Origin: Podarcis liolepis
Taxonomy: Eukaryota
Strand: one strand, 5' to 3'
Assembly: GCA_965112155.1 (NCBI GenBank)
Contig: OZ218103.1
DNA length: 64,000 bases
The position numbers were made by a program, and so were the translations under genes. The notes under the pieces are model-generated. The model ran no database searches and was not told the DNA's origin. It saw nothing but the letters and a program-made list of their open reading frames with translations. Positions 28,818 to 31,800 of this stretch are shown piece after piece. Every line of letters starts with the position of its first letter. Position 1 is the stretch's first letter.

Positions 28818-31800
28818 CTAATTCTCCATCTCTTCATTTTCATATTCAGCATCAATCAGCACTGCAGATCCGTCATGGCTGAGTGCAACTTTGCCAGTTA
28901 TGAGATTGCTTAGTGTTTCAACTGTTCCACAAAGTTTATGCACTTTAGGAAAAGAAAAAATGTTTGCAAGAGGTATGTAGACAGAGTTTCCATTAATAAA
29001 TGGCTGCAAACTTTTATTGTTGGCTTCTGTTAAAGGCAGATGCTTGAAATACTTCAGACTATGGTGAGATGGTTGGAATTTGGGTTCTGTTTCAGAGTCA
29101 TAACAGGGTTTTTTATATTCAGATTTTACGTGGTCCCAGAGTCTCCTTGCAATTATTTGTGCTGTCCAAATAACTTCATTGACCACTGCAGTCTGCAAAT
29201 ACTTTTCATCTTTAAGGCTTGGATATTCAGCTTTGAAAAGCTTTGATATGGAAAAAAAAGATGCAGCTTATTTATTGTTAGCACATTCTAACTGTTCAGA
29301 GCATTTCACATACTCAGCATTTTATGTTACAGAATATTAAACTAGGCACAGCTCTACTGGACCTTTTCTAACATTAGTAGATAGGTAGCCGTGTTGGTCT
29401 GCCATAGTCAAAATAAAAAAATTCCTTCCAGTAGCACCTTAAAGACCAACTAAGTTAGTTCTTGGTATGAGCTTTCGTGTGCATGCACACTTCTTCAGAT
29501 ATCTGAAGAATATTCAGATATTCTTCAGGTATCTGAAGAAGTGTGCATGCACACGAAAGCTCATACCAAGAACTAACTTAGTTGGTCTTTAAGGTGCTAC
29601 TGGAAGGAATTTTTTTATCTTTTCTAACATGTTTACAATACACAAAATAAAGCTGAAAACCGCCTGTTCTTACTTGTTTGACGAATGCAAATATAATTCT
29701 CCTGCTGATTTTTAAGATAGACCATAGCCTACAACTGTGTGGCTTTCTGACCATAAAACGGTTGTCCATGCTCCTCAGTTCAATTTTCAATAACATCTAT
29801 CTGTACGTGTGCTTTTTAAAAACAAAAAACCTCAGAAGCAAGCCCTGTAGTATGCGGTGTAAGCCTCCCTGCAAAATTAGGTAGAATTTGGGCAAACTAG
29901 CAAGAGCCCTATCACAATACAATCCCTTGCACGTCTGCTGAAAAGTAAGTTGCACTGAAGTTAATGGAACTTGCTCCTAAAGAAGTATGAATGGGCTTGC
30001 AACCTTAAAGTAACAAATCCTTAGTTTGAGTTAGCTTTTCTTCCATAAGTTACCCACTTACTGGAAATAAAACAAAAACAATTTTAAATTAATTTTGAGC
30101 AATATGGTTGATACTCCTACACTGCCTTATTCCCATCTTAAAAGTACAATCCAAGTTCAGAGTGGCCCACCGAACAAAGTGTTAGGCTTGGACCTGGGTT
30201 TAAATCTAGCTAATACTAATGGGAATTATAGGTTAAAAAAGATAAAAAGGTGGGAATTACAGCAAAGGGTCTAAAGGCTTAATTAAGTTATTAAAAACAA
30301 GTGTGCTTCAACAGTTCAATATCCAATAATGCTTACTAAACACTGAAACCGGGAAGAAAGCATTCTAAGTAACATTTTCCTCCCTGGATAAATGATTTCA
30401 TGTTTGATAATATTTTAGGGCTAATTAACAATTATTCTCATTCTTTTTGTCATTTTAAATGCCCAGTTACCTCTCCATGCCATGTGTTCATCAATCATAA
30501 CACATTTGTTTTGAAAGTCAGAATCAAAAGAACTTCTTTCCTAGTATGTATTGTGACACTGACTGCTGATCAGTCACACGGTTCACTGGATATCAATTCA
30601 GCACAAACTCAATACATAGACTTCTATTTCAGTTATCGTTTTATGTTTTACTATGTAACCACTTTATACTGAATTTATTCCTCCTTACAGAAGCAAAAGA
30701 TCCACTTACGGTTTTATAAACTTGTTCCTTGCATTTCTCAAAATGTGTAGGTCCATCATTCTGGTATTTTCTCACAAACACACCTATTTGTGTACAAGTT
30801 CCAACATCTTTTTCAGGAGGTGGGGCTCCTAATCCAGTAAACTCCACTGTATAGTCGTAGCGAGCTGCAACATCTTGGGCCCTAAATTTATGACAAAACA
30901 CCAAACTGTGCAAGTAACTTTGAAAGACCAATCCTAACAGCTCTATCTTGCTCATCAAACATGTGTATAGTGAGTACTGCTAAATCTCCCATCTCAAGTA
31001 CAAGCCATTATTGTGAGAGAGGCATTTCTTCCTTCCTATTAACAATGCCTGTGTGGATAAGTAAATGTAGAGAAATGGCAGCAGTGACAGGAGATTGTAG
31101 CTGTTAGGAACAAAGACACCTCCTCACCAGCCCAACAGACAAGGCCAGTGAGACAAAACAACTCCTGTTCTGTCCAATCCTGAATTTGGAAACAACACAT
31201 GATTGTTGCCAACAAACTTTTGTTCTGTCAATTAGAACTATACCCAGCCTTCACTGACTTCCAGGAGTCTGTTCTGTTCTTTAGACTATGAAATAGACAG
31301 CAAAGAGCATAAAGCTTCACCCTCATTAGAATAGTAATGTGAGAGTTCTCAAACTGGACCATGAATATTCTTAATAATTCTTAAGCATTATTAAGATATG
31401 TGTATGTGTGAAGGTTTAGTGGAGCTGGTATCCCACAGAAGGATGGGAGGAGAAGAGGAAATTTGGAGCTATGGTGGAGCAAATAGTATGCAGGAATTTT
31501 GAGACAATACCTATATTAGAGGATATTCCTGCTTTGAGACCAATCCCACTTCACCTAAAAAATCTCCGTATCTTTACCTACTACAATGCCTCGCAATGGT
31601 GCTCATGATTTAAAAAAAAAATTGAATCCCCACTATGAAGAAAATACATAGATCAGAAATTGTTGTCATTTCTTGTCTCACCTACATTCCACATATTGTG
31701 AGATTACTGGAGTGGAAAAAGCTACACCTAGACAACCAATGGTTGTCCTTCACTTTAATTACTGTTATTTCCAAAATGATTAACATATAAGGTAGGCATG

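What the first reader, a model, noticed from the sequence alone, without database searches (positions are those of the whole stretch)
29464..29567. Back-to-back hammerhead ribozyme motifs (one per strand) inside the HENMT1 piRNA-methyltransferase gene
Seen: the + strand at 29528-29567 folds as a type I hammerhead, with stem I GGUAU/AUACC, core CUGAAGA, an extra A, stem II GUGUG/CACAC, GAAA, a palindromic AGCU in place of a full stem III, and a UC^ site. The HENMT1-sense strand carries a second copy (29503-29464) with one stem I mismatch. Known: Penelope-like retroelements carry minimal hammerheads with palindromic stem III that cleave mainly as dimers, and an extra residue between A9 and G10.1 is tolerated in natural hammerheads. 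Inference: the insertion could self-cleave HENMT1 pre-mRNA co-transcriptionally ~230 nt before the last coding exon, or be silenced by folding into the surrounding long hairpin. That would be a conformational switch in a gene whose job is transposon defence.
Basis: partly seen in the sequence, partly recalled or inferred. Interest (0 to 1): 0.8.

Follow-up and report, generated by a model that had tools for sequence, protein, structure and literature searches.

The report
Penelope-like retroelement fold-back insertion, HENMT1 intron
The two hammerhead motifs are real, but they are the standard minimal ribozyme motifs carried by a very abundant Penelope-like jumping gene that recently landed as a head-to-head double copy in the last intron of a lizard's HENMT1 gene, and nothing suggests that they cut the host RNA.

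Summary
Both 40-nt motifs sit where stated and carry every sequence hallmark of the minimal hammerhead of Penelope-like elements (PLEs). HENMT1 is on the - strand.

They are passengers of a 244-bp insertion (29375-29618) flanked by a 12-bp target-site duplication (CTTTTCTAACAT). The insertion is two inverted, 5'-truncated copies of a PLE's pLTR/ORF-start segment. The arms are 101 nt with one mismatch, and one end alone carries a 38-bp "tail". That is the published PLE insertion signature.

Contigs of two sister taxa join 29362 directly to 29619, which is an exact empty site, so the insertion is young and not conserved. The element has thousands of near-identical copies in all four genomes examined. 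This scan already holds 111 hammerhead/Penelope notes on other DNA of this genome.

The "ribozyme switch" reading is not supported:
- A transcript of either strand holds one sense motif, downstream of its perfect complement.
- The 101-bp hairpin beats the hammerhead fold by about 62-68 kcal/mol.
- A dimer needs two sense copies, and a transcript has only one.
- Published PLE hammerheads are inactive as monomers, and the Anolis one cleaved only with its PLE protein.

No Rfam hammerhead model matches. This is an ordinary, already-known kind of feature and of low interest.

The parts
29363..29374 (.). Left copy of the 12-bp target-site duplication, CTTTTCTAACAT
   Evidence: Identical to 29619-29630. 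Contigs of sister taxa join 29362 to 29619 and keep one copy (table 8, records 17 and 24).
29375..29412 (-). 38-nt 'tail' present only on the left copy. It is AC-rich (…GGCAGACCAACACGGCUACC…). The copy ends 110 nt after the loop-II ATG.
   Evidence: The arms stop matching at 29412/29619. It matches the optional 30-40-bp PLE tail that is often present at one end only (PMC8557442) and lies between two internal RT start sites (PMC11167929).
29413..29513 (-). Left arm: a 5'-truncated PLE copy (pLTR/ORF-start segment), in sense on the HENMT1 strand
   Evidence: The 101-nt arm is complementary to 29518-29618 with one mismatch, at 29502/29529.
29464..29503 (-). Minimal hammerhead motif in HENMT1 sense, with one A.C mismatch in stem I. 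The predicted cut is after C29469.
29514..29517 (.). 4-nt non-palindromic centre (TCAG) of the inverted repeat, inside a nested small palindrome at 29491-29540
29518..29618 (+). Right arm: a 5'-truncated PLE copy without a tail. It ends 72 nt after the loop-II ATG, exactly at the target-site duplication.
   Evidence: A contig of the source species crosses 29593-30600 with 0 differences (record 8).
29528..29567 (+). Minimal hammerhead motif antisense to HENMT1, with a 5-bp stem I. The predicted cut is after C29562.
29619..29630 (.). Right copy of the target-site duplication, CTTTTCTAACAT
30641..30958 (-). ORF containing the penultimate HENMT1 coding exon. The aligned part is roughly 30707-30877.
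   Evidence: Matches human HENMT1 structure sequence 4XCX, residues 182-240, at E=1e-8.
31950..32093 (-). HENMT1 methyltransferase-domain exon
   Evidence: Matches 5WY0/4XCX residues 120-180 at E=9e-16, and also bacterial and plant Hen1.
28818..29198 (-). Putative last coding exon of HENMT1 (the C-terminal region that is not in solved structures)
   Evidence: A 126-aa ORF on the gene's strand. It has no PDB or Pfam match, so it is assigned by position only.

Best explanation
This is a young, lineage-specific insertion of a highly repeated Penelope-like retroelement (PLE, probably of the Poseidon/Penelope type) into the last intron of HENMT1. The 244-bp insert consists of two inverted, severely 5'-truncated copies of the element's pLTR/ORF-start segment, joined head-to-head. 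Each copy carries the element's own minimal hammerhead motif, which is why there is one motif per strand. It was made by the PLE's target-primed reverse transcription. Shown here: a staggered cut in AT-rich DNA left the 12-bp duplication, the two outer ends are element 3' ends that lie 72 and 110 nt into the element's reading frame, and only one end has the 38-nt tail. Inferred: either both nicked target strands primed cDNA at the two alternative internal start sites described for the Anolis element, or one cDNA folded back and copied itself. In HENMT1 pre-mRNA the insert should fold into a 101-bp almost perfect hairpin. The hammerhead is then a silent passenger. It is not expected to cleave the host transcript, and any effect on HENMT1 would come from the double-stranded RNA or from cryptic splice signals.
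For: [quoted passage not shown] The target-site duplication, arms, single mismatch and 38-nt one-sided tail are. PMC8557442 describes exactly this signature: high 5' truncation, an adjacent inverted 5'-truncated copy, and a 30-40-bp tail often at one end only. PMC11167929 shows that the Anolis PLE protein cleaves and extends both target strands, prefers AT-rich sites, initiates RT internally 111-118 nt into the ORF with a second start that defines the tail, and has its start codon inside the hammerhead. Here the ATG lies in loop II, its frame has one stop in 36 codons, and the outer ends are at +72 and +110. Empty site: contigs of organisms B and C run uninterrupted from 29362 to 29619. The source species' contigs cross both flank/element junctions with 0 differences (table 8). 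Repeat family: summed depth over the element is 1e5-1e6 against 9-56 in the flanks, with 5,700-11,000 contigs laid per run, in all four taxa. Silencing: the full hairpin is -185 kcal/mol with z=-27. The hammerhead-compatible ensemble is disfavoured by 62-68 kcal/mol, a fraction of 1e-44 to 1e-48; it is 1e-38 to 1e-41 in nascent RNA and 1e-3 to 3e-7 in single arms.
Against: No RT/GIY-YIG ORF is present at this locus or elsewhere in the window, so the PLE assignment rests on structure and on the literature, not on an alignment to a named PLE consensus. The reading frame from the ATG is closed at codon 10 in both arms, so the source could be a non-autonomous mini-element and not a truncated autonomous copy. 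The exact symmetry of the inner ends and the nested centre are not explained by simple two-strand priming. The thermodynamic argument ignores helicases, proteins and trans partners. No RNA data exist for the source species.
Confidence: 0.86

Rival explanations
1. One reading: the sense-strand hammerhead self-cleaves HENMT1 pre-mRNA co-transcriptionally, or toggles between a hairpin and an active ribozyme. On this view a ribozyme switch controls a transposon-defence gene.
For: The catalytic core is intact on both strands and the cut-site nucleotide is a permitted H. The isolated 40-mer can adopt stems I and II (17% of the ensemble). The Anolis PLE hammerhead does cleave when its own protein is added (PMC11167929).
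Against: There is one sense copy per transcript, and it is always downstream of its complement. The energy penalty is 62-68 kcal/mol, and the fraction is 1e-38 in nascent RNA. The sense copy has the weakened stem I and does not form it in the minimum-energy fold. Published minimal hammerheads show no monomer activity and low dimer activity (PMC4209133, PMC6765202), and no cleavage ends were seen in Anolis RNA-seq (PMC11167929). The insertion is absent in sister taxa.
Confidence: 0.03
2. The insert is a copy of a short non-autonomous, PLE-mobilised element (a 'mini-PLE', SINE-like, related to animal retrozymes). It would not be a 5'-truncated piece of an autonomous PLE.
For: The copy number of just this segment is enormous. 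Many family contigs diverge at one point, 29528/29529, which suggests a recurrent 5' boundary (table 7). The frame from the ATG is closed at codon 10 in both arms. A preprint links animal retrozymes to PLE pLTRs (10.64898/2026.07.22.740005).
Against: Other family contigs continue past the tail end at 29379 into further conserved sequence (table 7), as expected for longer copies. The stop sits at a position where about half of the family depth has another letter (table 3). There is no tandem direct arrangement here, and that arrangement defines retrozymes. The segment next to the RT start site is expected to be the most abundant part of any heavily 5'-truncated retroelement.
Confidence: 0.25
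3. The functional consequence, if there is one, comes from the 101-bp perfect intronic dsRNA. It could be A-to-I edited, processed into small RNAs, or interfere with splicing of the last intron, for example through the UUCCUUCCAG acceptor-like motif at 29609-29600 on the - strand.
For: The hairpin is -185 kcal/mol with z=-27. It has only one mismatch in 101 bp. It lies about 180-240 nt from the acceptor region.
Against: No RNA data are available. Thousands of similar insertions exist in the genome and are evidently tolerated, many of them in introns according to earlier scan notes. Intronic hairpins are usually removed with the intron.
Confidence: 0.12
4. The palindrome is an assembly artefact, such as a chimeric long read or a fold-back.
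For: Literature on PLEs notes that their complex structures often cause assembly problems (PMC8557442). No single short-read contig spans the centre.
Against: Short-read contigs of the source species cross both outer junctions without a difference, and each enters the element at a 3' end in opposite orientation. An inverted pair is therefore required whatever the centre looks like (records 1 and 8). There is a clean 12-bp target-site duplication and an exact empty site in relatives.
Confidence: 0.02

Closest known systems
Minimal hammerhead ribozymes (min-HHR) of metazoan Penelope-like elements (Cervera & De la Peña 2014, PMC4209133; dimer cleavage by Lünse et al. 2017, cited through PMC6765202)
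   Same: Type I topology and the CUGANGA / GAAA / UH core. There is an unpaired base between A9 and G10.1, and a G10.1-C11.1 pair. There is no real helix III, with palindromic AGCU at 15.1-16.1. Helix I is short (4-5 bp). The motifs are dispersed in thousands of copies. Pairs on opposite strands 100-700 bp apart are already described.
   Different: Helix II is 5 bp, against 6-8 bp in the flatworm and fly examples, and the whole 14-nt stem-loop II is self-complementary. Here the two motifs are only 24 nt apart, in a near-perfect palindrome. Activity was not tested.
PAc, the Poseidon element of Anolis carolinensis (PMC11167929)
   Same: A lizard PLE. The start codon lies inside hammerhead stem-loop II, with the cut site a few codons downstream. 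The target is AT-rich. Internal RT start sites about 110 nt into the ORF define an optional tail. Both target strands can be primed.
   Different: Here the cut site is 16 nt from the ATG, against 26 in PAc. The second end is at +72. The local frame has a stop at codon 10.
Generic PLE insertion architecture (Evgen'ev & Arkhipova 2005; Craig et al. 2021, PMC8557442)
   Same: Strong 5' truncation, an adjacent inverted 5'-truncated copy that forms inverted repeats, a 30-40-bp tail at one end only, and a hammerhead in the pLTR.
   Different: This is an extreme case with no ORF body at all. Both copies are truncated at the same template position, which gives a symmetric fold-back and not a long copy with a short inverted partner.
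Animal non-LTR retrozymes (PMC7229834; 10.64898/2026.07.22.740005)
   Same: They carry type I hammerheads with a weak helix III, are related to PLE pLTRs, are non-coding and have high copy numbers.
   Different: Retrozymes are head-to-tail tandem arrays that yield circular RNAs through two sense ribozymes. Here the copies are inverted, so no unit is bounded by two sense cut sites.

Membership tests
PLE minimal hammerhead (min-HHR) | Conserved core boxes CUGANGA ... GAAA ... and cleavage-site triplet UH | tested here: met
   CUGAAGA, GAAA and UC are present on both strands. There are 2 matches against 0.00 expected.
PLE minimal hammerhead (min-HHR) | [quoted passage not shown] | tested here: met
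   A29540 precedes G29541, and G29541 pairs with C29554. The feature list is taken from PMC4209133.
PLE minimal hammerhead (min-HHR) | No stable helix III; positions 15.2-16.2 palindromic so that two copies can pair | tested here: met
   A-GC-U at 29558-29561. No helix III forms in the fold.
PLE minimal hammerhead (min-HHR) | Short helix I (4-5 bp) and helix II of 5 bp or more | tested here: met
   The + copy has 5 + 5 bp. In the - copy helix I is interrupted by an A.C mismatch and is absent from the minimum-energy fold.
PLE minimal hammerhead (min-HHR) | Self-cleavage, as a dimer or with protein assistance | not testable with these tools
   There is no RNA run for the source species. The literature reports weak dimer activity or, for the Anolis element, cleavage only with the PLE protein (PMC4209133, PMC11167929).
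Canonical type I hammerhead (Rfam Hammerhead_1 and related models) | Score at or above the family gathering threshold | tested here: not met
   There is no hammerhead hit at gathering threshold, and none at E<=10 on 401 nt.
Canonical type I hammerhead (Rfam Hammerhead_1 and related models) | Closed helix III and loop-loop tertiary contacts between helices I and II | tested here: not met
   There is no helix III. Helix I is open-ended, with no loop or bulge to contact loop II.
Penelope-like element insertion | Target-site duplication and an empty site in relatives | tested here: met
   There is a 12-bp target-site duplication. Contigs of organisms B and C join 29362 to 29619.
Penelope-like element insertion | 5' truncation with an adjacent inverted 5'-truncated copy | tested here: met
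   The arms are 29413-29513 and 29518-29618, head-to-head. The feature is described in PMC8557442.
Penelope-like element insertion | [quoted passage not shown] | tested here: met
   A 38-nt extension at 29375-29412 is present on the left copy only.
Penelope-like element insertion | Sequence homology to an element that encodes a telomerase-like RT plus a GIY-YIG endonuclease | not testable with these tools
   No RT/EN ORF or other copy is in the window, and the host genome cannot be searched here. An earlier scan note (s1-847054) reports a full Poseidon-type copy elsewhere in this genome; I did not check it.
Non-LTR retrozyme | Head-to-tail tandem units, each with a sense hammerhead | tested here: not met
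   There are only two copies and they are inverted. There is no direct repeat of the unit.

The most novel reading that the evidence does not exclude
When the PLE family is transcribed and its protein is present in the germline, the protein-assisted hammerhead in the HENMT1-sense arm may be opened and cleaved, possibly by pairing in trans with the very abundant family transcripts. Alternatively, the perfect 101-bp hairpin may be diced into small RNAs. Either way, activity of this retroelement family would feed back on the enzyme that stabilises piRNAs, in this one lineage only.
Probability: 0.03. Interest if true: 0.7.

Novelty: already known. Interest (0 to 1): 0.14.

Why it matters
As a ribozyme finding it matters little. 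Minimal hammerheads in PLE ends, including pairs on opposite strands, have been described since 2014, and this genome holds thousands. The modest value is as a clean natural product of PLE integration. It has an exact empty site in sister taxa, a 12-bp target-site duplication, two opposed 3' ends at +72 and +110 of the element's frame, and a one-sided 38-nt tail. This fits the in-vitro finding of internal RT initiation and two-strand priming in the Anolis element. It also shows that the family was active very recently in this lineage. Its position in a piRNA-pathway gene is best taken as a coincidence until RNA data say otherwise.

Tried and rejected
- **Rfam:** the whole window at gathering threshold and 401 nt at E<=10 gave no hammerhead. 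The sub-threshold miRNA and "Hairpin-meta2" hits reflect the long palindrome, and I rejected them.
- **Pfam on four HENMT1 exon ORFs** gave nothing. Gene identity was obtained exon by exon from PDB sequences instead. I built and searched no joined spliced model.
- **BLAST of the element against the window** found no other copy, so I could make no family alignment or covariation test.
- **A literal search of the paper library** for the stem II/GAAA string found nothing.
- **Lünse et al. 2017** is not held in the library, so I cite it only through a review.
- **RNA evidence:** no RNA run is on record for the source species, and raw RNA reads exist only for a relative that appears to lack the insertion. 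I used the single read-laying run on DNA contigs of four taxa instead.
- **The search of earlier findings by sequence** was blank.
- **Constraints observed:** the N run at 47902-48089 was left untouched. 
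Full report
**What is in the sequence**

The + strand at 29528-29567 reads GGUAU-CUGAAGA-A-GUGUG(CAUG)CACAC-GAAA-GC-UC^AUACC. The - strand at 29503-29464 is the same except that the second base of stem I is A, which gives an A.C mismatch. 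A loose core pattern finds exactly these two sites in the 64-kb window, with none expected from shuffles. The isolated + strand 40-mer folds into stems I and II at -10.1 kcal/mol. The - strand 40-mer forms only stem II in its minimum-energy fold. No Rfam hammerhead model matches, either at gathering threshold or at E<=10 on 401 nt. The miRNA and hairpin hits there simply reflect a long palindrome.

**Host gene**

ORF pieces on the - strand at 31950-32093 and 30641-30958 match the sequences of the human HENMT1 crystal structures (4XCX, 5WY0) over residues 120-240, at E=9e-16 and 1e-8. The 126-aa ORF at 28818-29198(-) is in the right place for the last coding exon but has no solved or Pfam relative. 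The motifs therefore lie in the last intron. The - strand cut site is about 240-280 nt upstream of candidate acceptors. I searched the exons separately by reference and made no joined model.

**Anatomy of the surroundings**

- The motifs are the inner parts of an inverted repeat with arms 29413-29513 and 29518-29618. The arms are 101 nt, with a single mismatch at 29502/29529 and a 4-nt centre, TCAG.
- The left copy runs 38 nt further, to 29375-29412.
- The whole 244-bp block (29375-29618) is flanked by a perfect 12-bp direct repeat, CTTTTCTAACAT, at 29363-29374 and 29619-29630.
- Both outer ends are therefore 3' ends of the same unit in opposite orientation, and the 5'-truncated ends meet in the middle.
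- Stem-loop II contains an ATG. Its frame reads [35 protein letters not shown], which is open except for one stop.
- Counted from that ATG, the cut site is at nt 16, the tail-less end at nt 72 and the tailed end at nt 110.

**Evidence from other genomes (runs; all are Logan contigs)**

- In the source species (organism A), an 8,985-nt contig runs from the left flank into the tail (28800-29399). A 2,906-nt contig runs from the right arm into the right flank (29593-30600). Both have 0 differences.
- In organism B a 6,047-nt contig, and in organism C an 11,817-nt contig, pass without interruption from 29362 to 29619. That removes exactly the insert plus one copy of the duplication, which is a textbook empty site.
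- In organism E the contig lengths (128 = 34 + 94, with a 30-nt overlap to the neighbouring contig) fit the same join, but the join is not displayed directly.
- Flank divergence between A and these taxa is about 0.6-1.5%. The insertion is therefore recent, in line with the 1/101 arm mismatch.
- Over the element, summed depth jumps from 9-56 to 1e5-1e6, and 5,700-11,000 contigs per run align in all four taxa. This is a very abundant, recently active repeat family.
- Within the hammerhead, only the cut-site base varies at 10% or more (C/U, both permitted). Only copies at least 90% alike were laid, so this does not demonstrate selection.
- Loose ends pile up at about 29410 and at 29616-29623, which marks a recurrent tail-less boundary. 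They also pile up at 29528/29529. Other contigs continue past the tail at 29379.
- Many contigs from other loci join an antisense arm, cut at various points, to about 29529. Inverted pairs thus appear common in the family.

**What it is**

Each feature matches published descriptions of Penelope-like elements.

- Cervera & De la Peña (PMC4209133) defined the minimal hammerhead of metazoan PLEs by the features seen here: an extra base between 9 and 10.1, G10.1-C11.1, palindromic 15.2-16.2 with no real helix III, and a short helix I. They noted thousands of dispersed copies, including in reptiles, and pairs on opposite strands.
- Craig et al. (PMC8557442) summarise PLE insertions as heavily 5'-truncated, often with an adjacent inverted 5'-truncated copy, and with a 30-40-bp tail often at one end only.
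- The in-vitro study of the Anolis Poseidon element (PMC11167929) shows that the protein cuts AT-rich DNA and extends both target strands. Reverse transcription starts internally, 111-118 nt into the ORF, with a second start that defines the tail. The ORF's start codon lies within the hammerhead.

The present insert reproduces that geometry (+110 and +72, a 38-nt AC-rich tail, an ATG in loop II). I could not align it to a named PLE, because no RT/GIY-YIG copy is in the window and the host genome cannot be searched with these tools. Earlier notes of this scan report a full Poseidon-type copy and many similar fold-back insertions elsewhere in this genome, which they identify as a lizard. I treat those notes as leads only.

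**How it arose (inferred)**

The insert arose by target-primed reverse transcription at a staggered break. Two routes fit. Both nicked strands may have primed at the two alternative internal start sites, with the cDNAs joined in the middle. Alternatively, a single cDNA may have folded back at the locally palindromic UUCUUCAG-GUAU-CUGAAGAA region and copied itself, with endonuclease resolution at the tail boundary. The recurrent +72 boundary favours the first route. The exact symmetry of the inner ends and the nested centre favour the second. This remains unresolved (see the notebook entry under 'unexplained').

**Does it cut HENMT1 RNA?**

- The copies are head-to-head, so a transcript of either strand contains one sense motif, located 3' of its perfect complement.
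- The full region folds into a hairpin of -185 kcal/mol, z=-27.
- Forcing stems I and II with an open core costs 62-68 kcal/mol in the full context, an ensemble fraction of 1e-44 to 1e-48. In the nascent RNA that ends right after the motif, the fraction is already 1e-38 to 1e-41.
- Even in a single arm the CUGAAGA core pairs with the upstream UUCUUCAG, giving a fraction of 1e-3 to 3e-7.
- The HENMT1-sense copy is the one with the damaged stem I.
- Productive dimers need two sense copies, and a transcript has only one.
- Published minimal PLE hammerheads show no monomer activity and weak dimer activity (PMC4209133, PMC6765202).
- The Anolis one cleaved only with its own protein and left no detectable ends in RNA-seq (PMC11167929).
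- The insertion is not shared with sister taxa, so it cannot be a conserved regulator.

I therefore rate self-cleavage of the host pre-mRNA at about 3%. The "switch" is in effect permanently in the hairpin state. If the insert does anything, the dsRNA or the acceptor-like UUCCUUCCAG at 29609-29600(-) is the likelier agent. That is untested.

**Verdict**

The PLE attribution and the "silenced in the hairpin" option are supported. The ribozyme-switch idea is not supported. This is a known kind of feature, seen many times in this genome, and of low interest.

**Limits**

There are no RNA data for the source species and no family alignment. The thermodynamic model ignores proteins. The N run (47902-48089) was not touched. 

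Noticed in passing
window 29547-29576 (+) and mirror 29484-29455 (-): Hammerhead loop II holds an ATG. Its frame runs open to the end of the tail except for one stop at codon 10 (29574-29576). That stop lies at a position where about half of the family depth shows another letter. The layout is the same as the start codon inside the hammerhead reported for the Anolis PLE.
   Followed up: partly
window 29491-29540: The centre is a nested palindrome: TTCTTCAG-ATAT-CTGAAGAA-TAT-TCAG-ATA-TTCTTCAG-GTAT-CTGAAGAA. Both arms stop at the same template position. This hints at fold-back or repeated template switching during cDNA synthesis.
   Followed up: partly
window 29609-29600 (-) and 29422-29431 (+): Each antisense arm carries a polypyrimidine-AG motif (UUCCUUCCAG) that resembles a 3' splice site. 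In HENMT1 sense it lies about 370-410 nt upstream of the candidate acceptors of the last exon (29231 and 29193). Use as a cryptic acceptor was not tested.
   Followed up: no
window 29582-29589 with the mirror of 29386-29393 (sense copy, tail): In the tailed copy, GUUGGUCU pairs with AGACCAAC of the AC-rich tail. This forms a stem-loop that encloses the tail-less end point. It is reminiscent of the AC-rich stem-loop where the Anolis PLE starts reverse transcription.
   Followed up: partly
window 29349-29653: The element family is present at very high and similar abundance in all four related taxa examined. In the flanks here these taxa differ by only about 0.6-1.5%. This locus is filled only in the source species, which indicates very recent PLE activity.
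   Followed up: partly
window 47902-48089: A run of 188 N (gap or masked).
   Followed up: no
window 30080-30091 and 30234: There are small indel differences between the source species and its relatives in the same intron: 11 nt are missing in organism E, and one A is added in B, C and E. This is ordinary intron divergence.
   Followed up: no
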